Shown here piece after piece: positions 38,367-63,810 of a stretch of 64,000 bases of DNA. The translations under genes and the position numbers were made by a program. The DNA lies in the IMG/VR virus record IMGVR_UViG_3300049846_001037, positions 1 to 64,000 of that record; one strand, 5' to 3'. The notes beneath the pieces were generated by a model. That model was not told the origin of the DNA, made no database searches, and saw only the letters and a list, made by a program, of their open reading frames with translations. Each line of letters opens with the position of its first letter. Within the stretch, counting starts at the first letter, position 1.

Positions 38367-38383
38367 TATTAGTTTTTTATAAA
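38367..38383 (-). promoter_or_regulatory. Putative phage late promoter (TTTATAA-AAAAC-TAATA)
   Basis: Motif copy overlapping the spike stop codon, upstream of a GAGGA RBS. Confidence 0.6.
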
Positions 38384-45871: not shown

Positions 45872-47152
45872 TTAGTTTTTGGTGCTAGGAGGGGTATTTT
45901 TTAGGCTCTGCACCAATTTGGTGAAGATGTTAAGGGGGTGGTGGTTCTTGCTTGCATAAAGGTTGGCAAGTTCAAGAATTTGTTTCTTGTACTGATTTGC
46001 TACCTGTGGATTCTGCAGAGCTTCCATAGGAATTTTCTTCCACTCAAAATCTCTTTCTAAAGATTCCTTTTGAGCTGTCTCGACCTTCTTCAAAATAACA
46101 TCGACCTTTCTTGCTGTAGGGATGTTTTGCTTTTGAAGCTCTTCTCTCAACCTGATCAATTGAGGATAGTAGTTTATGGCAGTATCCAAATCAGCAAATG
46201 CTTCATTTGGAATTCCAAGTTTTTGAACTATTTCTTTCTGTGTGTTCCTTTGTTTTTGTAGAGATTCCTTTTGTTTTTGTTTATCTTCGGGACTCTCAAC
46301 TCCAAAGAATTTTTTATCTTCAGCAGACATCCATTCAAGATCGTCTTCCTTCTCTTCTTCAAAAGCATCAAAAATGGCTTTTGGAACAGCCAGATCTGTT
46401 TTGGATAGACCTGTTGCACTCTTTGGATTCTTACCAACAAGAAAGATTGTGTCATCCTTGGCTGTGTCAAAAACAATGTATTTGCCATTGATGGGCTTTA
46501 TTTGTTCAAGTTGTTCAACTATCTTTGCATGAAGTTTTGGATTTGCTTTCTTTAGGTCTTCAAGTCTTTCTTGGTTAATGGTGACGAGCTCTTTTTTCTG
46601 AAAAGCGGTCTTTGTAAAAGAGGTGAGTTTTCCAAATCGATATCCCTGCTGTTGAGATACGAGTTCAGGCACAGCCTCCTCAATACTTGAGCCGGTTCTT
46701 CTCTTGTACTCAAGATTCATGGCTCTATATTCGGCTGGATACTCAACTCTGATCTTCTCGTAGATTTGCTTAACAGGAACGTTTACGGTGCAATAGTCGA
46801 GAAGTTCTTCTATTACAACTCCAATGGTTGCGTTGTTCTTTTCTCCAATATCCTCCGCCATTTGTTTGACAGCCCTTTGGACGGAGGCAATGAGGTCTTC
46901 GCTTGGAGAAAAAGTGTCGCCAGCAAACTCTGTCTCAAGTGTTCCGCTGAACGAAACAGTTGTTTTGTTGATTCGAACTACCACACCAACACTGATCGTA
47001 TTCTTTATTACTACAGGAGGCTCATAGGCAAGCAGGAGATTTCCATCCCAAGCAAGACCATAATCTTGTAGGTTTTGAGCCAATGGAATACCGCCAGGAT
47101 GCTCTATCTTGACAGCCTGACGAAAACTCATGATTTTAAATGGTTTTTCCAA
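45872..47152 (-). CDS. Hypothetical charged protein with IMSFRQA leader-like motif (candidate internal virion protein)
   Basis: Long ORF. Start uncertain: TTG 47173, TTG 47152 (behind GAGGT) or ATG 47131. Confidence 0.55.
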   Translation of the reverse strand: MEKPFKIMSFRQAVKIEHPGGIPLAQNLQDYGLAWDGNLLLAYEPPVVIKNTISVGVVVRINKTTVSFSGTLETEFAGDTFSPSEDLIASVQRAVKQMAEDIGEKNNATIGVVIEELLDYCTVNVPVKQIYEKIRVEYPAEYRAMNLEYKRRTGSSIEEAVPELVSQQQGYRFGKLTSFTKTAFQKKELVTINQERLEDLKKANPKLHAKIVEQLEQIKPINGKYIVFDTAKDDTIFLVGKNPKSATGLSKTDLAVPKAIFDAFEEEKEDDLEWMSAEDKKFFGVESPEDKQKQKESLQKQRNTQKEIVQKLGIPNEAFADLDTAINYYPQLIRLREELQKQNIPTARKVDVILKKVETAQKESLERDFEWKKIPMEALQNPQVANQYKKQILELANLYASKNHHPLNIFTKLVQSLKNTPPSTKN

Positions 47153-50982: not shown

Positions 50983-50999
50983 TACTAGATTTTTATAAA
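50983..50999 (-). promoter_or_regulatory. Putative phage late promoter (TTTATAA-AAATC-TAGTA)
   Basis: Motif copy about 135 nt upstream of the sheath start. Confidence 0.65.
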
Positions 51000-51021: not shown

Positions 51022-52197
51022 TTATATATTGATTTGAGGAGTTATATTTAACACGTTGGGAACAACTGGATTTGTAAAGGCCAAATTGGTGTAAACCGCT
51101 GGGGCCATGTAGGGGTAGATGGGATAGTTGCCCGATGGAATGGCTGTTCCAGAGGCAGAAGTAATGATATCTACGCTCCTGTAATCAGTCCAGAATATGA
51201 AGCCATCGCAGCTAACAGAAGTGGAGAAGATGTGGTCGTTGATGTAGTCTTCCTCTCCCTGCCCGCCCTGAGCCCACGAAGTAAAATTGAAACCAGCAGA
51301 GTCATAAGGCTTTTTCTTCTTTTCTACCAAAAACCTCTCTACTAAGTCTCCAAGTTCCTGAGCCTCAATTGTCGATCCAGCATAGCATTCAAACTGAATA
51401 GACATCTCATAAATGCCACCATAAGTAGCATAAGTCATCTGGTCCTGGTAGTAGGTTTGAACCTGATATTGATCTCCAGCCCAAAGAACATCGTTCAACT
51501 TGATGACGGTTCCTGTTAGTCCAGGCACAAGGCCGCTGGCATTCACAATGAATTGGTCTGGCTCAACTGCCTGTATGACGGTTCCTGTGATGCTGGTTCC
51601 ACTGTAAATGAGATAGAACTGGTCTTGGTTTGCGCTGATGGCTACACCAATTGTGTGGATGCCTGTGCCAGATGGAGTAATTGGATTTGGAGTTCCATCT
51701 TCTCTGGGACATTCTAAAGCATAGATGAGCGAAGATGGGTCGTAGGTGTTTGGTGGCGGAAGCGTTATGATGATGCCAGTTGAGACTCCGCTATTGAAGT
51801 TGACACCCGTTCCACTAGTAAAAATGGCTTGAGTGATGTCTGTTCCAGTTGGGTATCCAATGGTGGGGTCAAGAGCCCAACGTGGATCATAGTCAAGTGT
51901 GTCGGGTAGATTTGTCCTCTGTAGATTGTCGCCAACCAGATCGTTGTCTGCCTGTATTGGGATCAACTGGACTCTTCCATAAATGTCTTGAATGAAGTCG
52001 TCGTAATGAATACGCCTCTGGTTGTTGCTTACATTCTTAACGATGATGGATGGAATACGTGCAGCCTCAAGACTGAACCTGTCAGAGACCTGTGTCTGCT
52101 GATACAGTCGGCTCTTACGTGCTTCCTTCCTGATGAAGTCAACCAAAAGGTCGATGATCTTCTTGGTGACGACTGAATGGTTTAGAATGAAAGACAT
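51022..52197 (-). CDS. Tail terminator/completion protein (gp15-like) with insertion
   Basis: RIPSIIVK...YEMSIQFECYAGSTIEAQELGDLV; immediately upstream of the sheath. Confidence 0.65.
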   Translation of the reverse strand: MSFILNHSVVTKKIIDLLVDFIRKEARKSRLYQQTQVSDRFSLEAARIPSIIVKNVSNNQRRIHYDDFIQDIYGRVQLIPIQADNDLVGDNLQRTNLPDTLDYDPRWALDPTIGYPTGTDITQAIFTSGTGVNFNSGVSTGIIITLPPPNTYDPSSLIYALECPREDGTPNPITPSGTGIHTIGVAISANQDQFYLIYSGTSITGTVIQAVEPDQFIVNASGLVPGLTGTVIKLNDVLWAGDQYQVQTYYQDQMTYATYGGIYEMSIQFECYAGSTIEAQELGDLVERFLVEKKKKPYDSAGFNFTSWAQGGQGEEDYINDHIFSTSVSCDGFIFWTDYRSVDIITSASGTAIPSGNYPIYPYMAPAVYTNLAFTNPVVPNVLNITPQINI

Positions 52198-52751
52198 TAC
52201 TTGGACGCCCCTATGATTTTAGATATGTCCCCGATGTTATGCTTTGTCTGCTGGTCCTTGTTCTCTTGGTCATACAAGAAAGTTACCACTTCCCTGTTGG
52301 TCACAACGACAATGAAGTTTGGAAGCAGTCTTATGCCCTGACTATTGTCTCCAGATATACGCTGGCCAAGGTTTAACTTTTTCAACAACTCAAACAACTG
52401 TTCTCTGGTCAAATATGGCGAGAACCTTTGGTTGTATCTGTCCTGAGCATGAACCGACATCGAAAAGCCAAACTTATCCTTTTCATCTTGGATGTAGTCA
52501 AAGCTAGTGAAACTTGACTTCATGCTTTCAATGTCCAACTTCATCTCAGCGGCCTCTTGCTTTAGCTGCTGGATGTACTTCTCTATCTTTCTGTACTCGT
52601 CTTCACTAGAAGCATTCTGTAGATAGTTCTGCTGTATCTCAATGGCTTGAGTTACATAGCGATACCTCTTCTGCGTATCCTTTAGCTTGTCCTCAAGCGT
52701 CTTATACTTTGGGTCAAGCGCAATGATGCTTCTGAATGAGATGATGATCAT
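52197..52751 (-). CDS. Coiled-coil protein with C-terminal RelE/DUF4258-like domain
   Basis: SVHAQDRYNQRF...FIVVV...VVTFLY; N-terminal ISFRS leader variant. Confidence 0.45.
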   Translation of the reverse strand: MIIISFRSIIALDPKYKTLEDKLKDTQKRYRYVTQAIEIQQNYLQNASSEDEYRKIEKYIQQLKQEAAEMKLDIESMKSSFTSFDYIQDEKDKFGFSMSVHAQDRYNQRFSPYLTREQLFELLKKLNLGQRISGDNSQGIRLLPNFIVVVTNREVVTFLYDQENKDQQTKHNIGDISKIIGASK

Positions 52752-53521: not shown

Positions 53522-53770
53522 TTAGTCCTCGAATGATATCTTTATGGTGATGGGTATCTTGGTTTCAACCATAGATCTAACTTTGTCTTCAATGTCCTTT
53601 CTCTTTATCTCAGGATCTTTTCTCATCATGTCCTGAATAATAGTGTTCACAATGGAGGACTTGACCGTGTTTAGATCGGCAACAAAGTCCTGCATGGCGT
53701 ACGTAATGTATTGCTGATGAGACTGGATATGCCTATTGCATATCTTGTCAATCTCTTTCTCGTTTATCAT
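53522..53770 (-). CDS. Hypothetical protein
   Basis: 82 aa, GAGG RBS, tiles with neighbours. Confidence 0.55.
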   Translation of the reverse strand: MINEKEIDKICNRHIQSHQQYITYAMQDFVADLNTVKSSIVNTIIQDMMRKDPEIKRKDIEDKVRSMVETKIPITIKISFED

Positions 53771-54869
53771 GTGGTGGCCTCTTTTTGCTACGAATTAGGT
53801 CTCTGTATTTTCTAACCCTATTCTGCCACTCTGGCCCATTCATCTCGTTTGAGTAGTCGTAGTTCTGCCTCAGGGGATTGGGAACACCGCTCCCCTCTAT
53901 TTGCTTTACCTTTTCATAGTATTCTGGGTCTTCAATGAGATGGTCTTTGGCTATCTCTTTTGCCAGACCTCTGTCATTTGTGTGTTCCATTTCATGGTCA
54001 GCGCCTTCTTGCAATTTCTTAGAGTCGAACTTACTGTCAGGCATCCCATCAGCAGCCCCGCCATGTAGACGGTCAACTGAGCCGGTTGACTCTAAGCCAC
54101 CTGAATTTCTGCCGAAAGAAGATATGACTTCCTGTATCGTGACAGTCTCCAGAGACCCGTCTTGGTCATGAACAACCGATATCTCTTTGTTGGATGGAAA
54201 ATTCTTGTCCTCCAAAAAAGCGGCTAGGAGAGGCATCTGTGAATCAGAGTACATCTCACAAACGAACCCAGAAACCCTAACCCAACCCTCTGTTATTAGG
54301 TAGGCTAAGAAGGCTGGCACGTCGCTGCTTAATTGCATTGCCATTCTCTTCTCTTTCTCACCCAATATGTCGGTCTGATTGATGATCCACTCTCCGTGAT
54401 GGATGTCGTCTGGTACCTCAAATGCTTGTCCATACTTATTTATCCAATAGCGTCCCATGTCTATTTTGACTGGCTGAAGTTGGCTGATGATCCTTATGGA
54501 GCCCTCACGCCTAACCTTCTCCATCTCTTCTTCTCTCAAAGACCTCGCATTGGGATCTTCTTCAAGATCTCTTTGGGCATGCCAGTCATCCACCTTCTTT
54601 TGCTCATAATATGGTATAGCCTTCTCTAATTCATTCATGGTCTTACGAAGTATCTCTATCTTCTGGTAGGTGGAAAAACCTGGACCAAGCCTATAGCCAC
54701 TCTTGGACACGTAGTATCTGTCAAGCAAATAGTGTAGCTGTTTGAACTGTGGCTCAAGCAACATGGAACCAGCGGAATCAAGCTTACGCCAGGTGTTGAG
54801 GTCTTGATCATAGTTGTTTTCATACCAACGAGGATTAAGCACGATTCCACCTTTCTCCATGAGTATCAA
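53748..54869 (-). CDS. Multidomain protein with DUF5661-like domain
   Basis: EGADHEMEHT....AKEIAKDHLIEDPEYYEK matches the DUF5661 pattern. The true start may be the GTG near 54842. Confidence 0.65.
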   Translation of the reverse strand: MILMEKGGIVLNPRWYENNYDQDLNTWRKLDSAGSMLLEPQFKQLHYLLDRYYVSKSGYRLGPGFSTYQKIEILRKTMNELEKAIPYYEQKKVDDWHAQRDLEEDPNARSLREEEMEKVRREGSIRIISQLQPVKIDMGRYWINKYGQAFEVPDDIHHGEWIINQTDILGEKEKRMAMQLSSDVPAFLAYLITEGWVRVSGFVCEMYSDSQMPLLAAFLEDKNFPSNKEISVVHDQDGSLETVTIQEVISSFGRNSGGLESTGSVDRLHGGAADGMPDSKFDSKKLQEGADHEMEHTNDRGLAKEIAKDHLIEDPEYYEKVKQIEGSGVPNPLRQNYDYSNEMNGPEWQNRVRKYRDLIRSKKRPPHDKRERD

Positions 54870-55386
54870 AGTATATTACTTCTGGACAACCAGCTGATCC
54901 AGAGGGGGTAATTTTGTAGTAATCAAAATTGCCGTCAGAATATATTGCTGGAGCGCTCATATCTATTACACCAAAATAAGCAACCGACCCGTTGATTTGG
55001 TTTTCCTCAGCGCCTTCAAACTGAAAGGTTCTATTAGTGTCTAACTGTTCTTTTGCCGACTGTCTAGCTTCTCGTGATGAGAAAGCCAGACCACCTGGAC
55101 CCGATAACAAGATGAATGCTGGCTTAATGTCCTTGTAAGATCTCACCTCATTATCATACATAGCCTTAGCCCAACTGATGACACCACACCTTTCAAGGTC
55201 TTCGACTTTGATATCTGGAAACTCTCTAGCAAGGTTTCTCTTGAACCTATCTGGGTTGATGCTGGCGTCCATCAAGATGGCAAAGAGCTGACTGCTGATC
55301 TTCTCGTGAAAAGGGGTCAGTCGTAAACATGGGTTGTTTACTGTTTCGAATGTTTGGAAGAGGTCAGCTTGTCTGTATGAAATCAT
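54835..55386 (-). CDS. Orphan protein with MISYRQADL leader
   Basis: 183 aa; leader shared with 56602-56991 and 61902-62309. Confidence 0.65.
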   Translation of the reverse strand: MISYRQADLFQTFETVNNPCLRLTPFHEKISSQLFAILMDASINPDRFKRNLAREFPDIKVEDLERCGVISWAKAMYDNEVRSYKDIKPAFILLSGPGGLAFSSREARQSAKEQLDTNRTFQFEGAEENQINGSVAYFGVIDMSAPAIYSDGNFDYYKITPSGSAGCPEVIYFDTHGERWNRA

Positions 55387-55387
55387 C

Positions 55388-55894
55388 TTAGAAGAATCTT
55401 CTAGACCTTAGGTGTCTCATACGGACAAAGTTTGGATTTGGAACAAGCGTTCTTGTGCTGCCGATTCCAAGCAGAGCTGGTCTCTCATTGGCTTTGATTC
55501 TCTCTTTCTCGGCCTGATACTTGGCTTCGTTCTGCTGGGCAATATTCATCATGTGGCCAGGAAGGTCTGGCGGATTGTAGTTGATGCCCTGATCGCCGAC
55601 CGTGAAGTTTCTTGCCTTCTCTGTGATGCTCTGAGCCTGTAAAGCAAAGACATAGGCTCCCAAGATGATGACGTTGATCCAATCTCTTGGTACAGTATCG
55701 AGGGTGTAGAATGTCTTGGTAGGATGTGAGTTGACATCCTGCAAAGCCAAATCAATGTAGGCAAACAATTGAGCGTCGTCAAAAATTTGGCAAGCCTCAT
55801 CGGTGTCATTCAAGACACTCCTGAGGTAGCTGATCATGTGATTTTCTCTATCTGAGTAGAGGTCATCACTGAGAGGAAATAGAATTGTGGGCAT
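55388..55894 (-). CDS. Head-tail adaptor (neck) protein
   Basis: LRSVLND....IFDDAQL...IDLALQDVN..P, helical; F...DQGI.Y motif; AAGGAG RBS. Confidence 0.7.
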   Translation of the reverse strand: MPTILFPLSDDLYSDRENHMISYLRSVLNDTDEACQIFDDAQLFAYIDLALQDVNSHPTKTFYTLDTVPRDWINVIILGAYVFALQAQSITEKARNFTVGDQGINYNPPDLPGHMMNIAQQNEAKYQAEKERIKANERPALLGIGSTRTLVPNPNFVRMRHLRSRRFF

Positions 55895-55904
55895 CTGTGG
55901 CTCC

Positions 55905-56591
55905 TTAGATTACCTTTCTGAATTCACGCATTTCTTTTAAGCCGAGACCTTTGTAGGTAAAGACATATTCTCCCGGCGATAGTGTCATCTTCCAAACTCC
56001 GTTGTCGTCAGTAATAGCAGACGATATCTTTACGTTGTTTGGGCTCTTGGGCATGAATGTGTTCTTCTCAAACACATTGACATGAACACCAGCAAGTGGC
56101 TTGTTGAACACGTCCACCACTACATCCTCAACCTCAATTCTTCCATTAGATCTCTTGGGTTGGTCTATCTTAAAGTTCTTGATGTCAAAACTTTCTGGGA
56201 TATGGTCCTCTGCAGGCTTCTCAGCAGCAGGGCTTGGCGTTGGTGGAAGGTCTTCTTTGATGGCATTTGATGTTATAGCTGAGTTCTCTATGACCTCAAA
56301 TGTCTCAGTAGCTTCCGTGACATTGCTAATGCTACCAGGATGTTTCGCCTGAATGTGAACCACATAATTGCCAGGTTGGGCATGGGGCGGTATTGTAAAC
56401 TCATACAAATACTTTCCAGTGCCAACTTGCTTCATGGGCGTCTCGTTCAAGATATTCAAAAGCTCTCGATGGCTCTTGTCAAAGAACTGAATGTCAACTC
56501 TGACGTTATCCATCTCAACAGCTTTTTGATGGCTATCTTGAAAGGCGGCCGGTATCTTTACTACCATTCCATTTGAAAATCTTCCTAGCAT
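55905..56591 (-). CDS. Ig-like/carboxypeptidase-regulatory-like domain virion protein
   Basis: GTGKYLYEFTIP...PGNY and PLAGVHV...TDDNGVW...L.PGEY motifs. Confidence 0.6.
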   Translation of the reverse strand: MLGRFSNGMVVKIPAAFQDSHQKAVEMDNVRVDIQFFDKSHRELLNILNETPMKQVGTGKYLYEFTIPPHAQPGNYVVHIQAKHPGSISNVTEATETFEVIENSAITSNAIKEDLPPTPSPAAEKPAEDHIPESFDIKNFKIDQPKRSNGRIEVEDVVVDVFNKPLAGVHVNVFEKNTFMPKSPNNVKISSAITDDNGVWKMTLSPGEYVFTYKGLGLKEMREFRKVI

Positions 56592-56601
56592 TTCCCTCTC
56601 C

Positions 56602-56991
56602 TTATCTAAACCCGAATCTTAGTCTGATCTCCTTGATCTTTGTTGATGGAACCCATCCTACATCGTTCTCGGCATAGTCAACTCCCACTTCTCCCCTGAG
56701 AGCCTTAAAGAACTTAAAGTAGGCCATTTCGGCATCAGCCATACTTTGCAAATCCTCTGTGGTAAACTTGCCGGGCGCTGGCTCAGAAAAACCACAAGAC
56801 GAAAGAACGGAAGCCAAAAGATCTTTTACATTCCCCTTTGCCTCTGGTTTATCACACTCTAAAGTGGAAAGGTCAACAGAGGCATGGAATGGGCCAGCAT
56901 TAGCGGGTCTACCCATACGACACTTGACAGAGCAATTTGACTGAGATATCTCAAGTGTCCTAAAGAGATCGGCTTGTCTATAGCTTATCAT
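56602..56991 (-). CDS. Orphan protein with MISYRQADL leader
   Basis: 129 aa; ATGA overlap with the upstream gene. Confidence 0.65.
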   Translation of the reverse strand: MISYRQADLFRTLEISQSNCSVKCRMGRPANAGPFHASVDLSTLECDKPEAKGNVKDLLASVLSSCGFSEPAPGKFTTEDLQSMADAEMAYFKFFKALRGEVGVDYAENDVGWVPSTKIKEIRLRFGFR

Positions 56992-57905
56992 ATCAAAAAG
57001 TTATACTGAGATGTGCCTAGGTAACGGAAGTTAGACGAAGAAGCGCTGGCAAAGGCAGAGTCAACGTCAATGTCGTAGGCAGTCTTGTATACCTTGTTAT
57101 CCTGCTGAGTTCCCTCAACCAACAATACGTATGTTCCTGGGTTGGCTGTCATCGTGAAGGTTCCACTGACATTTGTGTATGCAATCTCTATTGCATCGGC
57201 TGTGGTTAGAGTTCTAGCACCCTTCTCAAATAGTGAAATTCTCATGCCAGACAAACCAACACCATACTCAGTTGTGTAAGTATCAGAAATTACAAGTGAT
57301 CCATTGTTGACCTGAACAAGCGTAATGTCACCGAAGTTGAATGTTGGGTTGCCGCTTGGAACTGTTTTAGCCACCGTATTGGACAGGTATCCAGAGGCGC
57401 TATAGGTGGCATAGTAGTCACCTGGATTGAGATAGACCGTGTAAAGGCCACTGACAGTCACGGTAGAAGCAACCACGTTGTTGGTGCCACCAAAGGCAGC
57501 AATTGAAACCGCAGCATTGTTGATGCCCGATCCACTCGTGTTGATGACGTTGCCAGAGACGATGACTGATCCAGGTATGTTAACAGAAGCACCCGAAAGC
57601 AAGGGAAGAACACTGAACGAATCAGTGTACTCTAGCGAGTTGCCGCTGTACATGGCTCTGTAGTCAACAACTCTGTTTGTTATCGTGGCGTTAGGTGAAA
57701 CTGAATAGAGATAATAGAATCTATTGAGGTTGTCTGGATCTTGAGTCATTGTTCCAGAGGTAACATCAAAAACCTTAGTGCCAGCACCGATATAGTAGTA
57801 GACATCAAGCGATGCGCCAGACACACCAACGTTGATGGGGTTTCCATCGGCGTCTAGGAAGTTGGCAAAAAGTGTTACTTGAGTTCCTTGGAAGAAGTCT
57901 GACAT
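56988..57905 (-). CDS. Virion protein with tandem Ig-like/carboxypeptidase-regulatory-like domains
   Basis: VSGNV....G.GI..A.V...GLYTV.LNPGDY....SASGY, repeated; SG-rich. Confidence 0.65.
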   Translation of the reverse strand: MSDFFQGTQVTLFANFLDADGNPINVGVSGASLDVYYYIGAGTKVFDVTSGTMTQDPDNLNRFYYLYSVSPNATITNRVVDYRAMYSGNSLEYTDSFSVLPLLSGASVNIPGSVIVSGNVINTSGSGINNAAVSIAAFGGTNNVVASTVTVSGLYTVYLNPGDYYATYSASGYLSNTVAKTVPSGNPTFNFGDITLVQVNNGSLVISDTYTTEYGVGLSGMRISLFEKGARTLTTADAIEIAYTNVSGTFTMTANPGTYVLLVEGTQQDNKVYKTAYDIDVDSAFASASSSNFRYLGTSQYNFLI

Positions 57906-57914
57906 TGTTCCCTC

Positions 57915-59132
57915 TTAGAATATGAATTTCGTCTGGAGTTTCTTGCCGTTAATATCAACGATGTAGTGTCCTTTGTTCCATGCGGTTCCCTCAACGGCCC
58001 TGATGGTTCCAAATAGGTGTATCTTATCTGCGTCTACCAGCATGCTGTATATGGTCGGCGGCTGAAATGATTGAAACGGTGTTGGTGGAATGTAGTAAAT
58101 GGTAGACCAATTGCTGAGTTGAATGAAGTCTCCAACTGGGTTTCCACTTGTATCAAACGCAGCAAAGCTATGTCTCGGCACCCTACTCTGAGCTCCGCTT
58201 ATGTTTTTGACATCCGTGAACATTCCACATATATAAACCCTATCATTATTGAATATCATCTGAAAAATCCTATTGTCACCAATGAACTGATTTTTCATGA
58301 TACTAAAGTTTGGGGTCGTAATGGCAGCACCGGTGATGTAGTTTGTAGCTAAGGGAGAATAGTTACTCATTGATAATCCAGCTATCGTTGCGCCTTGTCC
58401 AGCAGAAACATACACTCTTGAATTGTTGTAAAAAACAAAGTCTGGTTGAGTGTTTGCAGAAACAGTCCAAGAGTATTGGGTTATGGAGCTTGGATTTGAA
58501 ACATTGAACGACTGCAAATACGTTGGGTAAATGAATGTACTAACATAAAGAATGCTAGTCGAAGGATTGAGGCTCATAGAGAGTATTCTTCCAGATATAT
58601 AGTTCGTCGGCGTTGAAGTGGGCGACATCTGGTAAAAATACGAGGTTAAATTTGTTAGGTTCACACCTATAAAATGGTAAATGTTAGTAGAGCCATTATA
58701 CAGAATGAACATGCCTCCAGCCCAAACCGTGTTGGTGTTGCTGTCATACTCAAGACAAGATATGACTGGAAATGGCATTGCAGATGCAACTATTGAGTAT
58801 TGGTTCTCAGGTAACAGTGCTGTAAATGTGTCTGTTGAGATTTGATAGAGAGTCATGAAGAGATTTGGTGATCCATCTACCTTCTTGAAAGCACCACCAA
58901 GAACTATCAGATCTCCTGATATCTGCTTGATGACACTGATTTGTCCGTCAAACGTATGCGATATTGGATCAAGGTTTCCAGAAACGAGATCGATGACGGC
59001 AAAATTAGACCTTGGTTGTCCATTAATTGACACAAAGTTACCGCCAAGGAATGCCTTGTCCCCTACTTTAATAGAGGAAAAAACAGACCCTACGATGCCA
59101 TTAATGCCTTTTATGTCCAACTGGTTTATCAT
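57915..59132 (-). CDS. Beta-propeller protein (fibre-associated adhesin candidate)
   Basis: Repeated blades LGGNF..ING..R..FA, LGGAF..VDG, AGGMF, ICGMF. Start moved to ATG 59132 (TAAT-ATG). Confidence 0.6.
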   Translation of the reverse strand: MINQLDIKGINGIVGSVFSSIKVGDKAFLGGNFVSINGQPRSNFAVIDLVSGNLDPISHTFDGQISVIKQISGDLIVLGGAFKKVDGSPNLFMTLYQISTDTFTALLPENQYSIVASAMPFPVISCLEYDSNTNTVWAGGMFILYNGSTNIYHFIGVNLTNLTSYFYQMSPTSTPTNYISGRILSMSLNPSTSILYVSTFIYPTYLQSFNVSNPSSITQYSWTVSANTQPDFVFYNNSRVYVSAGQGATIAGLSMSNYSPLATNYITGAAITTPNFSIMKNQFIGDNRIFQMIFNNDRVYICGMFTDVKNISGAQSRVPRHSFAAFDTSGNPVGDFIQLSNWSTIYYIPPTPFQSFQPPTIYSMLVDADKIHLFGTIRAVEGTAWNKGHYIVDINGKKLQTKFIF

Positions 59133-59133
59133 A

Positions 59134-60522
59134 TTAGTAGATGTAGAATCCCGCAACTGGAGCTGTTGTTGGTGCATACATGCTTCCAGTTAAGAACAAC
59201 GATGTTCCAGATATGACATACTGTGTTGCTGGAAGAATCAATATGCCGCTAACAAAAATCATTGCACTTGTGGGGGCGTTGGCGAAGTAGAAGTGCTTGT
59301 TCACTCCGTCAGTAGTTCCCGTCAATGATTCATTGAAAATGAAGTTTGTTGGAGTTCTATCATTGATGGTTTTGACATAGAGATTTGCAAATGGAGTTCC
59401 CGAAGCACCAATGTTTCCTACTCCAGAAACGGAGGTGGAAATGTTTGAGCCGCTTTCAAGAACTATGCTTGCATTTCCACTGAATGTAAGGTCTCCAAAG
59501 ATGTCCGAACCAGACTTGGCTACTATGGCATTGAGGTCTAGTCCACTTACACCTACGAGATTGTTTGCATAGATGGTATCCACAGGATTGGATAGGCTAC
59601 CTATGGATATGCCTGAGCTAAACTCAAGATCAGAAAGCACCGTAATTGGAGACATGCCAGTGATGTTGGTTGCGTGGAGCGTTTTGGTATAGATGTCGCC
59701 AAATGGATTTGTGTCGTCGCCAATCTGGTTTATGCCAGATACAGAGTTTAGAATGGACGCACCACTTCCAAAGGTAAGGTTTCCACTCATGGTGGAACCA
59801 CTGGTTGAAACTAGTCCGTTTAGAGATGAGATACCTGTTCCAGACGAAATGACACTATTTGCATAGATGGTGCTGTAGTATACTCCCGTGGTTCCAATGT
59901 CAAACACATTGTCTAGCTCAGGAACAAAGTTTCCGCTAACAAGTATGTAGCCCTGCGAAGCTAATCTAAGCAAGCCAGAGCCTTCAAGATTTGCATATAG
60001 ACCAGTGATTCCAACTGCATATGAAGATATACCTACCGAGAAACCACCTATTTGATATGAGAAACTGGAAATATTGCGGGCAAACACGCTCTCAGTTACG
60101 CTTCCGTTTGATGATATGGTGGAGTTTCCAGACATCACCCAATTCAACCCAGAAGAAACTACATCGGTGATATTAAGGGTTGCGCCAGACTCTATGGTAA
60201 GTGGTCCTGTAACCGTGTCGCCAGTTATGTGGACAAATGCAGAAGCACCAAAGGATGTTCCTGTGGTTAAGAACTGAAGCCTCTCAGCGACATCGTTGAA
60301 ATTACCAGCAGGATCAGTTCCCAACACTCTCTCTATCTGATCAAGAACAGTGTAAGCAACGTTTACATCATAGGCTACAACCTTGTTTCCCGACTGAGTG
60401 ACAACGCCATTGCTATCCCTGATCTCATCCAACACATAGAGAAGTGTTGAATTGGTACCAGAGCCGCTAGGATTAAGATCGAAGTCACTAGGATAGTTGC
60501 TTGTTCCAGTGATGTATGCCAT
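59134..60522 (-). CDS. Head/neck fibre protein
   Basis: N-terminal SNYP..FD...N.....QIE..LGT.P.G....V..RL anchor-like segment; same stalk and C-terminal motifs as the tail fibres, but located in the head module. Confidence 0.6.
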   Translation of the reverse strand: MAYITGTSNYPSDFDLNPSGSGTNSTLLYVLDEIRDSNGVVTQSGNKVVAYDVNVAYTVLDQIERVLGTDPAGNFNDVAERLQFLTTGTSFGASAFVHITGDTVTGPLTIESGATLNITDVVSSGLNWVMSGNSTISSNGSVTESVFARNISSFSYQIGGFSVGISSYAVGITGLYANLEGSGLLRLASQGYILVSGNFVPELDNVFDIGTTGVYYSTIYANSVISSGTGISSLNGLVSTSGSTMSGNLTFGSGASILNSVSGINQIGDDTNPFGDIYTKTLHATNITGMSPITVLSDLEFSSGISIGSLSNPVDTIYANNLVGVSGLDLNAIVAKSGSDIFGDLTFSGNASIVLESGSNISTSVSGVGNIGASGTPFANLYVKTINDRTPTNFIFNESLTGTTDGVNKHFYFANAPTSAMIFVSGILILPATQYVISGTSLFLTGSMYAPTTAPVAGFYIY

Positions 60523-60525
60523 TGC

Positions 60526-60786
60526 TTACCCCTTTTTCTTTTTGAAGTATTTGATGAAAAGCATGCAAAAGAGCATGTATGCTTGAGATATCAGTATGAC
60601 GTAATGGTTGTGAGCGCTGAAATACAAAACCAATGCGAAAAAGTGAAAGATTAAAGAGCTCGTTGCAAGCAAACTGTAACCATTAACTTTTTTGGATCCC
60701 TCCCTCAGTTGCGAAAAAATCTTGAAAAAGTTTGACACAAAGAGTAGGGTTATGATGATGTAGATGGCAGAAATTATAGTTTCCAA
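60526..60786 (-). CDS. Small 3-TM membrane protein
   Basis: Three hydrophobic segments, basic C-terminus, AAGGAG RBS before TTG. Confidence 0.6.
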   Translation of the reverse strand: METIISAIYIIITLLFVSNFFKIFSQLREGSKKVNGYSLLATSSLIFHFFALVLYFSAHNHYVILISQAYMLFCMLFIKYFKKKKG

Positions 60787-60801
60787 AATGATCTCCTTAG
60801 A

Positions 60802-60990
60802 TCAATCGTTGATGTTGAAGGCCTCGTTATAGGAAGAGGCCAGCATGTCGGCGCATTTCTTTTTGTTGTCCTTGAGTTTGGAGGCTATTTCCCTTGTCGT
60901 CTCTCCCCTCTTCGTAGACACCTTGCTTCCTATTGTTTCAATAGACCTTATCATTTCCTGCACTTTCTTTGCAGCCGGTTCTTGCTTCAT
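60802..60990 (-). CDS. Small hypothetical protein
   Basis: Start moved to ATG 60990 (TAAGGAG RBS): MKQEPAAKK... Confidence 0.55.
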   Translation of the reverse strand: MKQEPAAKKVQEMIRSIETIGSKVSTKRGETTREIASKLKDNKKKCADMLASSYNEAFNIND

Positions 60991-61000
60991 TTGATGCTCC

Positions 61001-61558
61001 TTAGGCAAAAAGCTTTTTGGCCATCTCAATGATGATGCTTACAGCATCGGGACCAAAAAAGATTGAAGTGATTAGGATGACAATGAGTAAAACGACCATC
61101 ACAATGACCCTTAGGTTGTTGAGCCCAGAGATCAACTCTTGCAGGAACGCAAGAGGTTTCCACTTCTTCTTTTCGACAGGAGCCTTTTCCTTCAACGCAT
61201 CTTTTGTTTGCTCAATTGTTTTTAACTCAGACAGGTTGGTGTTTAACTGTTGAAGGGCATACTTAATTTCTTTTAGGTCGTCATCCTTATTTAGTAGTCT
61301 TGTTTCTGTTTGTAGTATCTTGATCTGGTTTCCAAGTTCAATGATCTTCTCTGCGTCTCTGTTCTTCTGTACATGCAAATTCTTTAACATCTCACCCATG
61401 ATGGTGATGTTGTCGCTCAATGCGCTTAGGGCTTCGGCCTGATCTATTGACTCTCTTTCAAAGTTCTTAAGAGATGCTTGCGTGGAAGCAATGAGGTCTA
61501 TTAGGAACTCAATCGAAACAGGCTCACTCTTTTTAGTTGTTCTCTTTTTTAGGGGCAT
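61001..61558 (-). CDS. Coiled-coil protein with C-terminal TM (XhlA/holin-like architecture)
   Basis: Start moved to ATG 61558 (AAGGA RBS); heptad region followed by VIVMVVLLIVILITSIFFG. Confidence 0.55.
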   Translation of the reverse strand: MPLKKRTTKKSEPVSIEFLIDLIASTQASLKNFERESIDQAEALSALSDNITIMGEMLKNLHVQKNRDAEKIIELGNQIKILQTETRLLNKDDDLKEIKYALQQLNTNLSELKTIEQTKDALKEKAPVEKKKWKPLAFLQELISGLNNLRVIVMVVLLIVILITSIFFGPDAVSIIIEMAKKLFA

Positions 61559-61817
61559 TGGCTTTCCTTTGGTCCAAAATCTTCGCAGACATATCAAGGA
61601 TGACGGCGGAAGAATTCTTCTGCTTCTTCTGCCCAACCATCTTACCTCCAACCATGACCCAACCATTCTCGACAACTACTTGACGAGCTGGGTCTACTTT
61701 GATGGGGTCAACAGGATCCTGTGTCAGATCCGGGTTGTGCAAATGCTGACCGCCTACGCCCGTAAAGCGCAGTTTGCCCTTGGCTTGATCAAAGTATTGT
61801 TGGTATTTGTCATCCAT
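61533..61817 (-). CDS. Hypothetical protein
   Basis: 94 aa, GAGGA RBS, directly behind a promoter motif. Confidence 0.6.
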   Translation of the reverse strand: MDDKYQQYFDQAKGKLRFTGVGGQHLHNPDLTQDPVDPIKVDPARQVVVENGWVMVGGKMVGQKKQKNSSAVILDMSAKILDQRKANAPKKENN

Positions 61818-61834
61818 ATGATAGTCCTCTATAT

Positions 61835-61851
61835 TATTACTTATTTATAAA
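61835..61851 (-). promoter_or_regulatory. Putative phage late promoter (TTTATAA-ATAAG-TAATA)
   Basis: Motif copy fused to the U-tract of a terminator. Confidence 0.65.
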
Positions 61852-61879
61852 AGAAGGAGAGTTCTTGCGAACTCTCCTT
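61849..61879 (-). terminator. Intrinsic terminator (possibly bidirectional)
   Basis: 11-bp stem AAGGAGAGTTC/GAACTCTCCTT, GCAA loop on the minus strand, T-rich on both sides. Confidence 0.8.
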
Positions 61880-61901
61880 TGTTTGTATAACTTTAATTGT
61901 C

Positions 61902-62309
61902 TTAAATTGGTTTGATTTTTAGTCTGATGACCCATTCATATCTACCAACTGAATGTCCATTTGAGACTGGCGGGGTGTCGCTTATGGCAGCAAGAAGATC
62001 CATATATTCATTCCTAACCCTTCTAGAGAAGTCATCAAAGGTCTCATCTTCTTCGGAATATATATCTGCCCATAGACCGTTGCCACCGATGGCCTCTTCA
62101 ATCCTTTTTACTATTTTATCAGTAATCTCCGTAGCAGAAGCAGGCACCTTTATGTGAACATTGGTAACAGCATAGTACCTGCCATTCTTTCTACCATGAG
62201 CATTTCCATTGTGTTCTGTTGGAAAAAGGATGGTGAAGTCCACGTCCACTGGTGGCACAATGGATTTCTGCAGTGAAGGTAGAAGGTCTGCCTGCCTAAA
62301 AGATATCAT
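61902..62309 (-). CDS. Orphan protein with MISFRQADL leader
   Basis: 135 aa; ATGA overlap with 62306-62485. Confidence 0.65.
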   Translation of the reverse strand: MISFRQADLLPSLQKSIVPPVDVDFTILFPTEHNGNAHGRKNGRYYAVTNVHIKVPASATEITDKIVKRIEEAIGGNGLWADIYSEEDETFDDFSRRVRNEYMDLLAAISDTPPVSNGHSVGRYEWVIRLKIKPI

Positions 62310-62485
62310 TTCAAGATGTTGTCGATGAATGTATCTGGCTGAGTATATCTGATGTTTGTCTTTATAGATGGTCTCTCTGAGCCATCAACGCCACCAACGA
62401 CATGATCAAGTCTTCCGCTCTTGTCGGATGTGACAGCTTGGTTTAGTTCATCTGCTTTGAAATCGGGTGCATTCTCAGTGCTCAT
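62306..62485 (-). CDS. Small hypothetical protein (59 aa, below the ORF-track cutoff)
   Basis: GAGGAG RBS; MSTENAPDFKADELNQAVTSDKSGRLDHVVGGVDGSERPSIKTNIRYTQPDTFIDNILK. Confidence 0.7.
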   Translation of the reverse strand: MSTENAPDFKADELNQAVTSDKSGRLDHVVGGVDGSERPSIKTNIRYTQPDTFIDNILK

Positions 62486-62516: not shown

Positions 62517-62533
62517 TATTACTTTATTATAAA
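62517..62533 (-). promoter_or_regulatory. Putative phage late promoter (TTTATAA-TAAAG-TAATA)
   Basis: Motif copy fused to the capsid terminator U-tract. Confidence 0.65.
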
Positions 62534-62562
62534 AAAAGACCCCAGGTTTTACCCTGGGGTCT
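62531..62562 (-). terminator. Intrinsic terminator after the major capsid gene
   Basis: GACCCCAGG/CCTGGGGTC stem followed by T7 on the minus strand. Confidence 0.9.
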
Positions 62563-62587: not shown

Positions 62588-63574
62588 TTAGGCAGAGGCG
62601 AGAGTGTACTTGGCAACGCCACGAGCGTTAGCAACGGCGATACCAATGATCTCGTTAACAACCCAGCCCAACTTCAACTGCTTGGGCTCGTCGGCTGGTA
62701 GAACTTCGATGTCCTGACGGATTGGCATTGGGCCAACGAAGTCAGCATCGGCAACAGCGTAAATCGTACGAGCAGGAACAACCTTCGATACGATTACGTC
62801 TGCGGTCCACAAACGGCCGAACAAGCCCGTCTGGAGGACTTCACGCTGAGTAACTGGATCGAACGAGGTCTGATCGAAGGTACGGAAGCCAGCGAAGGTA
62901 CGGATGTTCATGAAGATTCTGGCTGTGATCAAATCCCACTGGTCAACTTCAGAGTACAAGTCGGCCAACTTGTTCTTCTCAAGAACGGTGCCGGTCGTTG
63001 GGGTTCCGGTGACGGCTACGTTCTCCAAGGTCGAAGCGAATTCCAAAGCGGCGAAGATGTTGGCATCTTCCTGAGCCTGGATTTCCTGACGAGCCTTCTG
63101 CTGAGCACGGTCAATGACGTTGAACCTGCGTCTCTTGACTTCTGAGATACGGACGGTTGGGTTTGAAACAACCTCGAACTCAGGAACCGAGATACGGTCG
63201 CCCTTGATTCTGCTCTCTGGTACTGCGCCATTGCTTGAGACAACGATGGCGTTTACGTCGATATCCTTGTCGTAAACGGCCAAAGCGCCCTGAGGAAGTG
63301 GGTCAACACGGAGAGCCTTACGGCCAACTCCCTGGTAGTCCAAGTTCCTACGGATTGGGTTTGCCATTGCCTGAGCGAGAGCGATCTTGCCACGCTCGTT
63401 GGAAAGAGCCTTGATCAAAAGGGCTTCTTTCTCGGCATCTGTTGGCTGAACTTCAGGGTTTGCTTTGCCAGCTTCTGGGTTAGCAAGGGCCTGAGCGTAA
63501 GCCAATAGCTGTTCCAATGAGTCTTTCTTTGTGTAGGCGTTCATTACTCCGCCATTGTTAAACATTGTTGCCAT
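62588..63574 (-). CDS. Major capsid protein (HK97 fold)
   Basis: 328 aa; LAQAMANPIRRNLDYQG, VPEFEVVSNP, QAQED..IF.AL, G.FG.LW...VIVS, LGWVVNEIIG. Strong TAAGGAG RBS, biased codons, followed by a terminator. Confidence 0.9.
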   Translation of the reverse strand: MATMFNNGGVMNAYTKKDSLEQLLAYAQALANPEAGKANPEVQPTDAEKEALLIKALSNERGKIALAQAMANPIRRNLDYQGVGRKALRVDPLPQGALAVYDKDIDVNAIVVSSNGAVPESRIKGDRISVPEFEVVSNPTVRISEVKRRRFNVIDRAQQKARQEIQAQEDANIFAALEFASTLENVAVTGTPTTGTVLEKNKLADLYSEVDQWDLITARIFMNIRTFAGFRTFDQTSFDPVTQREVLQTGLFGRLWTADVIVSKVVPARTIYAVADADFVGPMPIRQDIEVLPADEPKQLKLGWVVNEIIGIAVANARGVAKYTLASA

Positions 63575-63588
63575 TGATTTGTTTCTCC

Positions 63589-63768
63589 TTATTTAATTTT
63601 TTTGACGTAGTTCAATCTAAGCGTCAATGGATTTGTGCAAATAACTTTTGCTTTCTTTTTCTTGATAAGAATACGTGCTTTCCCTGGTCTTACCGGAGTC
63701 AGCTCAATCATATTGCCGTTAAAAACGGGAATAGATTTTTGTTCACTTGCAGGAAAGAAATTAGGCAT
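63589..63768 (-). CDS. Stand-alone PLMP (RRXRR N-terminal)-like domain microprotein
   Basis: GAGGT RBS 8 nt before ATG 63768. IPVFNGNMIELTPVRPGKARILIKKKKAKVICTNPLTLRLNY follows the IscB N-terminal pattern VxVlxxxGxPLMPxxxxxARxLLKxGKAxVxxxxPFTIxLxY. Confidence 0.7.
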   Translation of the reverse strand: MPNFFPASEQKSIPVFNGNMIELTPVRPGKARILIKKKKAKVICTNPLTLRLNYVKKIK

Positions 63769-63810
63769 CTCAGCCAACCTCATCGAACTTTATCTAGATG
63801 GTTATAGCAA

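What the first reader, a model, noticed from the sequence alone, without database searches (positions are those of the whole stretch)
54835..62309. Shared N-terminal leader MIS[YF]RQADL on unrelated orphan proteins: candidate capsid-targeting/processing signal
Seen: 54835-55386 and 56602-56991 both begin MISYRQADLF, and 61902-62309 begins MISFRQADLL, after which they diverge. The DNA differs at synonymous sites (Ser is TCA, AGC, TCT; Ala is GCT, GCC, GCA), so selection acts on the peptide and this is not a DNA repeat. Variants occur in 45872-47152 (IMSFRQAV, plus internal LTSFTKTA) and 52197-52751 (IISFRSIIA). All are interleaved singly among conserved virion genes. Known: T4 internal proteins share a ~10-aa N-terminal capsid targeting sequence removed by the prohead protease. 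Inference: a new address label for packaging, and possibly injecting, cargo proteins, with possible cleavage after Ala.
Basis: partly seen in the sequence, partly recalled or inferred. Interest (0 to 1): 0.8.

Follow-up and report, generated by a model that had tools for sequence, protein, structure and literature searches.

The report
Conserved N-terminal tag, hypervariable phage family
Three small genes among the virion genes of an uncultured 205-kb phage share a selected 10-14-residue opening peptide, but it is the conserved first segment of a large, fast-evolving phage protein family, not a portable label on unrelated proteins, and whether it sends them into the capsid is untested.

Summary
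Three minus-strand ORFs start MIS[YF]RQADL (3 matches to the degenerate pattern, 0 in shuffles) and use different Ser, Arg and Ala codons.

The window is bases 1-64000 of a 205-kb relative of Bacillus phage G. The same genome has a four-gene array near 167-169 kb; three of those genes carry the motif. Metagenomes hold about 80 more such ORFs, up to 14-15 in tandem. A profile search finds 71 cluster representatives.

The consensus is M-I-S-[YF]-R-[QKR]-[AS]-D-L-L-D-x-φ-K; conservation then vanishes. In 21 of 71 representatives, proteins of 2-4 units, the ADL core recurs about every 130 residues. MIS[YF]R is kept almost only at true N-termini. Two AF2 models whose bodies show no sequence similarity have the same strand/helix order, with the leader a low-confidence helix outside the globule. 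So this is probably one hypervariable domain family, with no Pfam or PHROG match.

The arrays sit behind the terminator-promoter cassette that otherwise precedes mostly virion genes. All copies in a genome share one helix variant (DLLD, DLID or DIFK), which suggests docking to one partner. Capsid targeting is plausible (about 0.3) but unshown, and no cleavage motif is visible.

The parts
54835..55386 (-). Family member A, 183 aa, starts MISYRQADLFQTFE. It is an accessory gene in a variable slot between the neck-region genes 55388-55894 and 53748-54869.
   Evidence: No Pfam or PHROG hit. The slot is empty in relative L093 and holds an unrelated 394-aa MISFRK... gene in L009. Public gene calls start it at residue 39 and so miss the leader.
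55345..55386 (-). Leader segment of A (first 14 codons)
   Evidence: Pattern match; profile score 30.8 bits.
56602..56991 (-). Family member B, 129 aa, starts MISYRQADLFRTLE. Its start overlaps the stop of 56988-57905 (ATGA).
   Evidence: Orthologues L090, L093 (same slot) and L105 are only 20-40% identical overall but keep the leader. AF2: pLDDT 80, leader helix 4-15 at pLDDT 50-67, then a b-b-a-b-b-a-b-b globule.
56950..56991 (-). Leader segment of B
61902..62309 (-). Family member C, 135 aa, starts MISFRQADLLPSLQ. It is the second gene of a two-gene unit just downstream of the major capsid gene, with an ATGA overlap onto the 59-aa ORF 62306-62485.
   Evidence: Three paralogues fill the same post-capsid slot in L111. 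AF2: pLDDT 80, leader at pLDDT 50-59, then b-b-a-b-a-b-b.
62268..62309 (-). Leader segment of C
62306..62485 (-). 59-aa ORF, first gene of the unit that contains C
   Evidence: No family hit. Absent at this place in L111.
62517..62533 (-). Promoter-like motif TTTATAATAAAGTAATA, directly after a strong hairpin plus U-run (about 62538-62561) that ends the capsid gene
   Evidence: Motif scan: 4 sites in the window against 0.34 in shuffles. Hairpin -26.1 kcal/mol, z = -6.0.
61832..61851 (-). Second terminator-promoter cassette, just downstream of C (terminator 61854-61879)
52197..52751 (-). ISFR-type start without the ADL part (MIIISFRSIIALD), 184 aa, coiled-coil-like; a variable slot before the 51022-52197 gene and the sheath gene
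   Evidence: Relative L093 has a 124-aa MNKISFRQ... gene in this slot and L009 has none.
45872..47131 (-). ISFR-type start (MSFRQAVKIEH), 419 aa, just upstream of the tape-measure-like gene. Weak variant; link to the family unproven.
   Evidence: No relatives found in IMG/VR.
62588..63574 (-). Major capsid protein (context)
   Evidence: phrog_2522, E = 8.5e-75. 56% identical to Bacillus phage G gp27.
50983..50999 (-). Same promoter-like motif upstream of the tail sheath gene (context; shows the motif class precedes virion genes)

Best explanation
The three ORFs belong to a large, fast-evolving protein family private to a clade of phage-G-like jumbo phages from freshwater sediment, wetland and soil.

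Its unit is about 130 aa: a short conserved first segment ([QKR]-[AS]-D-L-[LIF]-[DK]-x-φ-[KR], modelled as a helix) followed by a hypervariable, mostly acidic alpha/beta domain that may be ferredoxin-like. Units occur in three forms: single genes slipped into variable slots of the virion gene cluster; translationally coupled tandem arrays; and 2-4 units fused in one polypeptide. In the fused form the ADL segment restarts each unit. MIS[YF]R is added, and strongly conserved, almost only at true N-termini.

Shown: peptide-level selection; position specificity; the repeat-unit structure; absence from Pfam and PHROGs; and shared terminator-promoter cassettes with mostly virion genes.

Inferred: the conserved segment is a docking element that ties every variable unit to one common partner. 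This would explain why all copies in a genome carry the same variant while their bodies have diverged beyond recognition. The variable domains would be a repertoire of binders or inhibitors shaped by an arms race.

The leading candidate destination is the assembling virion, either the prohead interior as for T4 internal proteins or the surface. That step is a hypothesis: about 0.3 for internal cargo and about 0.15 for surface attachment.
For: - Pattern: 3 hits against 0 in shuffles. Similarity among the three is confined to the first 10-20 aa.
- 84 unique motif ORFs in 225 kb of related DNA; 81 sit on a start codon. Six of the 84 lie in non-phage contigs and are chance matches, leaving about 78 true members, 6 of them in this genome.
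- Logo and codon table: Ser uses TCN and AGY, Arg uses CGN and AGR, and conservation ends after position 14.
- 47 bodies fall into 35 BLAST clusters. hhalign probability between two body clusters is 0.3%.
- 0 of 67 members hit Pfam or PHROGs. Of 71 representatives, one has a marginal DUF5395 hit in Pfam.
- The profile search finds 71 representatives at E <= 1e-3, nearly all matched from residue 1.
- Internal ADL cores are spaced mostly 80-159 aa apart, median about 132.
- The same unit is first in P0002 and second in P0011.
- Two AF2 models share the strand/helix order and have low-pLDDT leaders. Both weakly hit the same PDB folds.
- The promoter-like motif sits upstream of the protease, scaffold and sheath genes, a gene in the tail/baseplate region, the post-capsid unit and the 94-aa gene 61533-61817. 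It occurs once in about 59 kb of non-structural DNA, directly in front of the array. It also precedes arrays in L111 and L113.
- Genome-specific variants: DLID in 6 of 7 copies in L089, DIFK in 7 of 9 in L124, DLLD elsewhere.
- A sister lineage, L007, has five tandem genes in the same post-capsid slot with a different shared start, MNYR[HY]LIAYLGQSR, which resembles the start of its own post-portal gene.
Against: - No partner has been identified and there are no virion proteomics for any member.
- The common fold rests on two models built from 4-5 sequences each, which could not be superposed.
- The helix is only weakly amphipathic (hydrophobic moment 0.16-0.35) and is modelled at low confidence.
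- Large arrays lie in non-structural DNA, for example next to a DNA-ligase-like gene in L109.
- In L091, the homologue of this genome's array has no recognisable promoter motif in front.
- 'Late' timing is inferred only from which genes the motif precedes.
- Genome-specific variants could partly reflect local expansion or gene conversion.
- The member set was gathered with the motif itself, so its invariance is partly circular.
Confidence: 0.6

Rival explanations
1. One reading: a portable T4-like capsid-targeting sequence on unrelated cargo. It binds the prohead core, is cut off by the prohead protease, and the cargo is injected.
For: - A conserved N-terminal peptide on highly diverse small proteins, as reviewed for T4 internal proteins (PMC3012670).
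- The genes lie inside head, neck and tail operons and behind the promoter type that precedes mostly virion genes.
- The conserved gene after the portal gene, in the position of T4 gp67/gp68 (from my knowledge of the T4 map), has an ISFR-like start in all relatives.
- Late expression of an arms-race-like family makes most sense if the products are pre-packaged.
Against: - The carriers appear to be one repeat-unit family, not unrelated proteins.
- The ADL core also occurs internally, so it is not purely an N-terminal signal.
- No conserved cleavage motif follows it.
- The protease is at most weakly S78-like, not T4 gp21-like.
- The bodies are acidic, median pI 5.3.
- Arrays of 9-15 genes would be an unusually large cargo set.
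Confidence: 0.22
2. There is no targeting. The ADL segment is simply the most constrained structural element of a rapidly diverging domain. MIS[YF]R is kept because it gives good initiation or early elongation and N-terminal stability in ATGA-coupled gene arrays.
For: - The core recurs at each unit start, like part of a domain.
- 78 of 79 starts read xTGA, which fits stop-start coupling and fixes an A as the first base of codon 2.
- MIS[YF]R is lost when a unit becomes internal.
Against: - Both AF2 models place the segment outside the confident globule.
- Residues I, S, Y/F and R are kept through GC-rich synonymous codons, so RNA-level or AU-richness explanations fail.
- Genome-specific variants shared by all copies are not expected for a purely internal structural element.
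Confidence: 0.2
3. The free N-terminus MIS[YF]R is a recognition tag, a degron or an adaptor-like signal, for the phage's own ClpX-type unfoldase.
For: - The genome encodes a 421-aa protein with ClpX zinc-finger, AAA_2 and ClpB_D2-small domains, next to another AAA protein and a DnaJ.
- ClpX is known to read short N-terminal motifs (my knowledge: Flynn et al. 2003).
- This would explain why MIS[YF]R is conserved almost only at true N-termini.
Against: - The motif does not fit the published E. coli N-motif classes well (by eye).
- No ClpP was seen in the 142 kb of the genome that was read.
- It does not explain conservation of the internal ADL cores.
- Co-occurrence of ClpX with the family in relatives was not tested.
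Confidence: 0.08
4. QADLF/QADLL is a sliding-clamp-binding motif, like QL[SD]LF and the QADMF of DnaE.
For: The three window copies and one array copy resemble the pentapeptide consensus. That consensus is from my own knowledge, not from a tool.
Against: The position corresponding to the key Gln is Q in only 39 of 84 copies and K, R or H in 44. In lineage L124 the motif reads ADIFK.
Confidence: 0.02

Closest known systems
T4 internal proteins (IPI, IPII, IPIII and others) with the N-terminal capsid-targeting sequence
   Same: A short conserved N-terminal peptide on small proteins whose remainder is highly diverse. The genes are phage-encoded and scattered or clustered. The proposed role of the variable part is in host-phage conflict (PMC3012670).
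   Different: - There is no sequence similarity to the T4 CTS as I recall it.
- The core also recurs internally at each repeat unit.
- No cleavage motif follows it.
- The protease is not gp21-type.
- The bodies are acidic.
- Copy numbers reach 9-15 per array.
- Virion location is not shown.
Hypervariable tandem arrays of small binder or immunity domains in conflict systems (for example SUKH-type immunity arrays of polymorphic toxin systems)
   Same: Tandem arrays of very divergent paralogues of one small alpha/beta domain, sometimes fused in one chain. The pattern is typical of diversifying selection on a binding surface (my knowledge; PMC3482391 surfaced but I did not read it).
   Different: No Pfam match to any such family. 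The arrays lie in lytic jumbo-phage genomes behind virion-type promoters. There is a sharply conserved N-terminal peptide, which those families lack.
Cargo-loading peptides of encapsulins and coat-binding ends of phage scaffolding proteins and proteases
   Same: A short terminal peptide that docks otherwise unrelated cargo onto the inner face of an HK97-fold shell. This is the mechanism the docking hypothesis would most resemble (my knowledge).
   Different: Here the peptide is N-terminal and is unlike the conserved scaffold C-terminus (...LS.LNWK) or the motif shared by protease and scaffold. No binding has been tested.
Bacillus phage G (closest cultured relative)
   Same: Capsid protein 56% identical over residues 43-325. 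It has many small orphan genes after the capsid gene and its own recurring start, MKRLIKK[AS], on several proteins.
   Different: No MIS[YF]R/ADL family was seen in the 31 kb read. The phage G paper searched mentions no N-terminal signal.

Membership tests
T4-type capsid-targeting sequence / internal proteins | Short conserved N-terminal peptide on otherwise diverse small proteins | tested here: met
   With the qualification that the carriers seem to be one divergent family and the core also occurs internally.
T4-type capsid-targeting sequence / internal proteins | The peptide ends in a prohead-protease site and is removed | tested here: inconclusive
   No conserved residue pattern follows position 14. 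The specificity of this phage's protease, weakly S78-like, is unknown. Cleavage itself cannot be tested in silico.
T4-type capsid-targeting sequence / internal proteins | The proteins are present inside proheads and virions and are ejected | not testable with these tools
   The phage is uncultured, there are no proteomes, and no RNA runs hold it. The only indirect evidence is location among virion genes and the shared promoter type.
T4-type capsid-targeting sequence / internal proteins | Sequence relatedness to the T4 CTS and a gp21-type (S77) protease | tested here: not met
   No resemblance to the T4 CTS sequence as I recall it (MKTYQEFIAE; the sequence is from memory, not). Pfam gives only a sub-threshold Peptidase_S78 hit for the 529-aa protease candidate.
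Beta-clamp-binding motif (QL[SD]LF type) | Near-invariant Gln at the first motif position | tested here: not met
   Q in 39 of 84 copies; K 23, R 18, H 3.
Sec/Tat signal peptide or membrane anchor | Hydrophobic core of 10 or more residues after a basic N-region | tested here: not met
   No hydrophobic run of 16 or more residues in any of 67 members. The leader contains D8 and usually D11.
DNA repeat or mobile-element end | Conservation at the nucleotide level | tested here: not met
   At the Ser and Arg codons, 76-78% of pairs differ synonymously, including TCN/AGY and CGN/AGR switches.
Any described protein family (Pfam-A, PHROGs) | Significant profile match | tested here: not met
   0 of 67 members in Pfam and in PHROGs. 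Among 71 representatives, one marginal DUF5395 hit in Pfam.
ClpX N-terminal recognition signals | Match to a known N-motif class and presence of the unfoldase | tested here: inconclusive
   A ClpX-like gene is present. The motif fit is poor by eye. Binding is not testable here.

The most novel reading that the evidence does not exclude
A clade of phage-G-like jumbo phages uses a genome-specific address helix (MIS[YF]R-x-ADLLD, ADLID or ADIFK) to load a large, rapidly diversifying arsenal of small acidic alpha/beta effector units into the capsid for co-injection. The units may be single, in arrays, or strung 2-4 per chain. The address co-evolves with one receptor in the prohead. This would be an internal-protein system independent of T4's and far larger.
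Probability: 0.3. Interest if true: 0.8.

Novelty: new variant of a known kind. Interest (0 to 1): 0.55.

Why it matters
If the conserved segment is a docking address, it gives a sequence handle for finding every accessory protein that these uncultured jumbo phages route to one destination. It would also give a second, independent example of the T4 'conserved tag, hypervariable cargo' principle and a possible tag for loading foreign proteins into very large capsids.

Whatever the destination, the family is an undescribed, strongly diversifying domain, up to 15 genes in a row with no Pfam or PHROG match. It is therefore a good candidate for anti-defence or host-interference functions.

There is also a practical point. 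Public gene calls for two of the three window genes start at internal methionines and miss the leader. Families like this are therefore under-detected in protein databases.

Tried and rejected
- Megablast of the region against GenBank phages: no match.
- The search for homologous proteins with the 129-aa protein returned only the protein itself, in a version truncated at an internal Met.
- The L001 hit of the first pattern scan is an internal chance match. L092, L103, L100, L101 and L104 from the metagenome scan are chance matches in non-phage contigs.
- I first took L092/L103 for a post-portal-type protein carrying the ADLL leader, and dropped that after reading the context.
- Clamp-binding motif: rejected on Gln variability.
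- Resemblance of the leader to the scaffold C-terminus (DL..RL.KL): rejected. The scaffold end is conserved in L007, whose family start differs, so there is no co-variation.
- hhalign between two body clusters: no signal.
- Foldseek against PDB and BFVD: only weak hits, TM about 0.5 or below, to KCTD C-terminal-like and kinetoplastid ring proteins. The ESM Atlas suggests a Cas2/VapD-like ferredoxin fold, as a lead only.
- Pattern scans for R at position 6 in IMG/VR: nothing.
- Relatives of the 45872 gene: none found.
- The phage G proteomics paper has no supplements held and no mention of N-terminal signals.
- No usable RNA run exists.
- The genome was read only over 1-83.5 kb and 137.7-196.7 kb. 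The strict DNA patterns did cover the whole contig.


Full report
**1. The observation**

All genes in the window lie on the minus strand. ORFs 54835-55386 (183 aa) and 56602-56991 (129 aa) begin MISYRQADLF. ORF 61902-62309 (135 aa) begins MISFRQADLL. A back-translated pattern for M-I-S-[YF]-R-Q-A-D-L hits exactly these three start sites and none of 100 dinucleotide-preserving shuffles. BLASTP among the proteins finds similarity only in the first 10-20 residues.

**2. Where the window comes from**

A scan of IMG/VR with the pattern shows that the window is bases 1-64000 of IMGVR_UViG_3300049846_001037, a 205,426-bp contig. The region holds:
- a major capsid protein (62588-63574, phrog_2522);
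- a tail sheath, a tube protein and a gene I take to be the tape measure (from its position and size only; it has no family hit);
- fibre-like and Ig-like proteins.

Upstream of the capsid gene lie, in order: a GpA-type terminase, the portal, a 129-aa Zn-ribbon 'post-portal' gene, a protease candidate (sub-threshold S78), a 687-aa scaffold-like protein and a decoration-like protein. The closest cultured relative is Bacillus phage G, whose capsid protein is 56% identical. Hundreds of uncultured relatives exist. Sequencing runs that hold the locus come from freshwater sediment, wetland and soil.

**3. More copies in the same genome and in relatives**

The same contig has a tandem, translationally coupled array at about 166.7-169.3 kb:
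- MLSSRHADLL (131 aa)
- MITISLRSL (273 aa)
- MISYRQADLL (195 aa)
- MIISFRRADLL (251 aa)

A slightly relaxed pattern scan of JGI metagenomes returned 29 loci. Five of them are chance hits in non-phage DNA. The rest carry one to many motif ORFs: 14-15 consecutive genes in 6.3 kb in L096, six in L089, six in L109 and five each in L088 and L095. Most of these array members were not themselves matched by the DNA pattern.

In all I counted 84 unique motif ORFs. Six of them lie in the non-phage contigs, which leaves about 78 true members, 6 of them in this genome. Of the 84, 81 sit exactly on a start codon.

The consensus is M-I-S-[YF]-R-[QKR]-[AS]-D-L-L-D-x-φ-K, after which conservation drops to background. 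Ser uses both TCN and AGY codons and Arg uses both CGN and AGR. A profile of the first 34 residues finds 71 cluster representatives at E <= 1e-3 among 1.84 billion proteins, nearly all matched from residue 1.

**4. What the carriers are**

None of 67 members hits Pfam or PHROGs, and the 71 representatives give only one marginal Pfam hit. The bodies fall into 35 BLAST clusters out of 47 distinct sequences. A profile-profile comparison of two clusters without the leader is negative. Four lines of evidence point the other way.

(i) Lengths peak sharply at 120-140 aa.

(ii) AF2 models of the B and C clusters have pLDDT about 80 and pTM 0.67-0.70. Both show the same order of elements: a low-confidence N-terminal helix (pLDDT 50-67), then beta-beta-alpha-beta-alpha-beta-beta. 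Both weakly retrieve the same PDB folds. The ESM Atlas suggests a ferredoxin-like fold of the Cas2/VapD kind, as a lead only.

(iii) Of the 71 representatives, 21 contain two to four copies of the core [KRQT]-A-D-[LI]-[LIF]-x-x-φ-[KR]. Most spacings are 80-159 residues, with a median of about 132, which is the single-gene length.

(iv) The same unit is first in one protein, where it starts MISFRKADLLD, and second in another, where it starts ...MQRQADLFERIK (P0002 and P0011).

Most internal copies lack MIS[YF]R. A few fusions that I take to be recent still read ...AS-ISYRKADL....

My reading is that this is one hypervariable domain family. Its unit begins with the ADL segment, and MIS[YF]R caps only true N-termini. 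The 183-aa protein A has no recognisable relatives and was not modelled, so its place in the family rests on the leader alone.

**5. Evidence on function**

(a) Gene position. Members occupy variable slots between conserved virion genes.
- After the capsid gene: C in this genome, three paralogues in L111, and five genes with a different shared start in L007.
- After the post-portal gene: in L099 and L087.
- Between the Ig-like genes 56988-57905 and 55905-56591: B and its L093 orthologue.

In L093 the flanking structural genes are 51-86% identical to the window's, while the B orthologue is 20% identical overall yet keeps the leader.

(b) Regulation. A motif TTTATA[AG][AT]-N3-7-TA[AG]TA, usually abutting a strong terminator hairpin, occurs four times in the window (0.34 expected). 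The sites are upstream of the unit containing C, the 94-aa gene 61533-61817, the sheath gene and a gene in the tail/baseplate region. It occurs twice more in the head module, upstream of the protease and scaffold genes. In about 59 kb of non-structural DNA of the same genome it occurs once, directly in front of the motif-gene array. It also precedes the arrays in L111 and L113. The family is therefore probably co-transcribed with virion genes. That this promoter class is 'late' is an inference.

(c) Genome-specific variants. All copies in a genome share the same form of the segment even though their bodies are unalignable: DLID in L089, DIFK in L124 and DLLD in most others. Synonymous sites are saturated, so this pattern fits co-evolution with one partner better than recent duplication.

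(d) Related starts. The post-portal gene of every relative begins with a related ISFR-type sequence. Examples are MIISARQINAYIG here, MISFRTIKSYMGQ in L009 and MIKLSFRDRVGYIGQ in L011. The alternative family start in L007 resembles the start of its own post-portal gene.

(e) Properties of the bodies. They are soluble and mostly acidic, with a median pI of 5.3.

(f) Other genes. The genome encodes a ClpX-like unfoldase, a second AAA protein, DnaJ, a tubulin and NusG.

**6. Interpretation**

The best-supported account is a hypervariable repeat-unit family whose conserved first segment docks each unit to a common partner and which is expressed with the virion genes. The destination may be the prohead interior, as for T4 internal proteins, or the virion surface.

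Points in favour of a virion destination are location, the shared promoter and the logic that a late-made arms-race repertoire is useful mainly if it is pre-packaged. Points against the strict T4 model are the internal copies, the lack of any visible cleavage motif, the acidic bodies, a protease that is not gp21-like, and arrays of 9-15 genes.

Rival readings are a purely structural segment combined with an initiation-friendly N-terminal cap, and a ClpX recognition tag. Neither is excluded. A clamp-binding motif and a DNA repeat are rejected (section 3).

**7. Novelty and verdict**

I found no description of this family or of such a tag in phage-G-like phages. In kind, it is a new variant of 'conserved terminal tag plus hypervariable body'.

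**Limits**

- The member set was collected with the motif itself.
- Only two structures were modelled, from shallow alignments.
- 31% of the genome was not read, apart from the strict pattern scans.

Noticed in passing
window 62517-62533, 61832-61851, 50983-50999, 38367-38383 (all minus strand); L005 5179-5198 and 6840-6856; L002 2769-2785: A phage-specific promoter-like motif, TTTATA[AG][AT]-N3-7-TA[AG]TA, usually placed right after a terminator hairpin. It precedes mostly virion genes and the motif-gene array. In L002 and L111 it lies only 5-8 nt before the ATG, which suggests leaderless or near-leaderless mRNAs.
   Followed up: partly
L005 6560-6700 (C-terminal part of the protease candidate) and L005 7060-7160 (N-terminal part of the scaffold-like protein); this is contig DNA just beyond the window: The protease C-terminal half and the scaffold N-terminus share a motif, ...PGVGDVRD[VY]EQKAFE..A.EGPSG..., conserved in relatives. 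It may be a common capsid-docking or processing element. It is unrelated to the MISYR leader.
   Followed up: partly
L085 (Bacillus phage G, record positions 8295-39131): Phage G has its own recurring N-terminus, MKRLI[KS]K (MKRLISKTA, LKRLIKKSN, MKRLIKKAS, MKRLVKAEQ), on several small orphan proteins around the head genes. It also has a run of small CxxC proteins after the capsid gene.
   Followed up: no
L007 11096-13934; L108 53-2143; L102 92-352; L124 649-4052: Other shared N-termini occur on small tandem genes in related phages. One is MNYR[HY]LIAYLGQSR: five genes after the capsid gene of L007, one of them a two-unit fusion with an internal copy. The other is an MNR[YF]x[FYL] family, many members of which have CxxC motifs.
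   Followed up: partly
L119 10980-17690 (contig about 150.9-157.6 kb): The phage encodes a ClpX-like protein (421 aa, with the ClpX zinc finger), a 595-aa AAA protein, DnaJ, a tubulin-family protein and a NusG homologue in a row. No ClpP was seen in the 142 kb read.
   Followed up: partly
window 56602-56991 and 54835-55386: Public protein collections hold these two genes only from internal methionines (residues 26 and 39), so automatic gene calling missed the conserved leader.
   Followed up: yes
L097 595-1458: A 287-aa ORF fuses an N-terminal domain carrying an HEMAH motif (it looks SprT-like or zincin-like by eye; not profiled) to an internal ISYRQSDLLD leader plus a unit.
   Followed up: no
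L111 1774-2334: A 186-aa ORF starting MMNIYGLFDPRDGSLKYIGKT (it looks like a GIY-YIG homing endonuclease by eye) sits between the protease and scaffold genes of a close relative and is absent here.
   Followed up: no
window 62588-63574 (residues 1-42): The capsid protein has a conserved 42-residue N-terminal extension (M..[LM]FN..G.[ML]NA...) that the phage G capsid protein lacks. It may be a propeptide.
   Followed up: no
window 63589-63783: A 64-aa ORF directly upstream of the capsid gene is conserved in all close relatives (..PVFNGNM..L.PVRPGKA..) and has a weak RRXRR Pfam hit on record.
   Followed up: no
L117 13528-14172 (contig about 164 kb): A 214-aa gene starting MSKIISARP lies just upstream of a VWA-domain gene. 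It has the same IISAR start as the post-portal gene.
   Followed up: no
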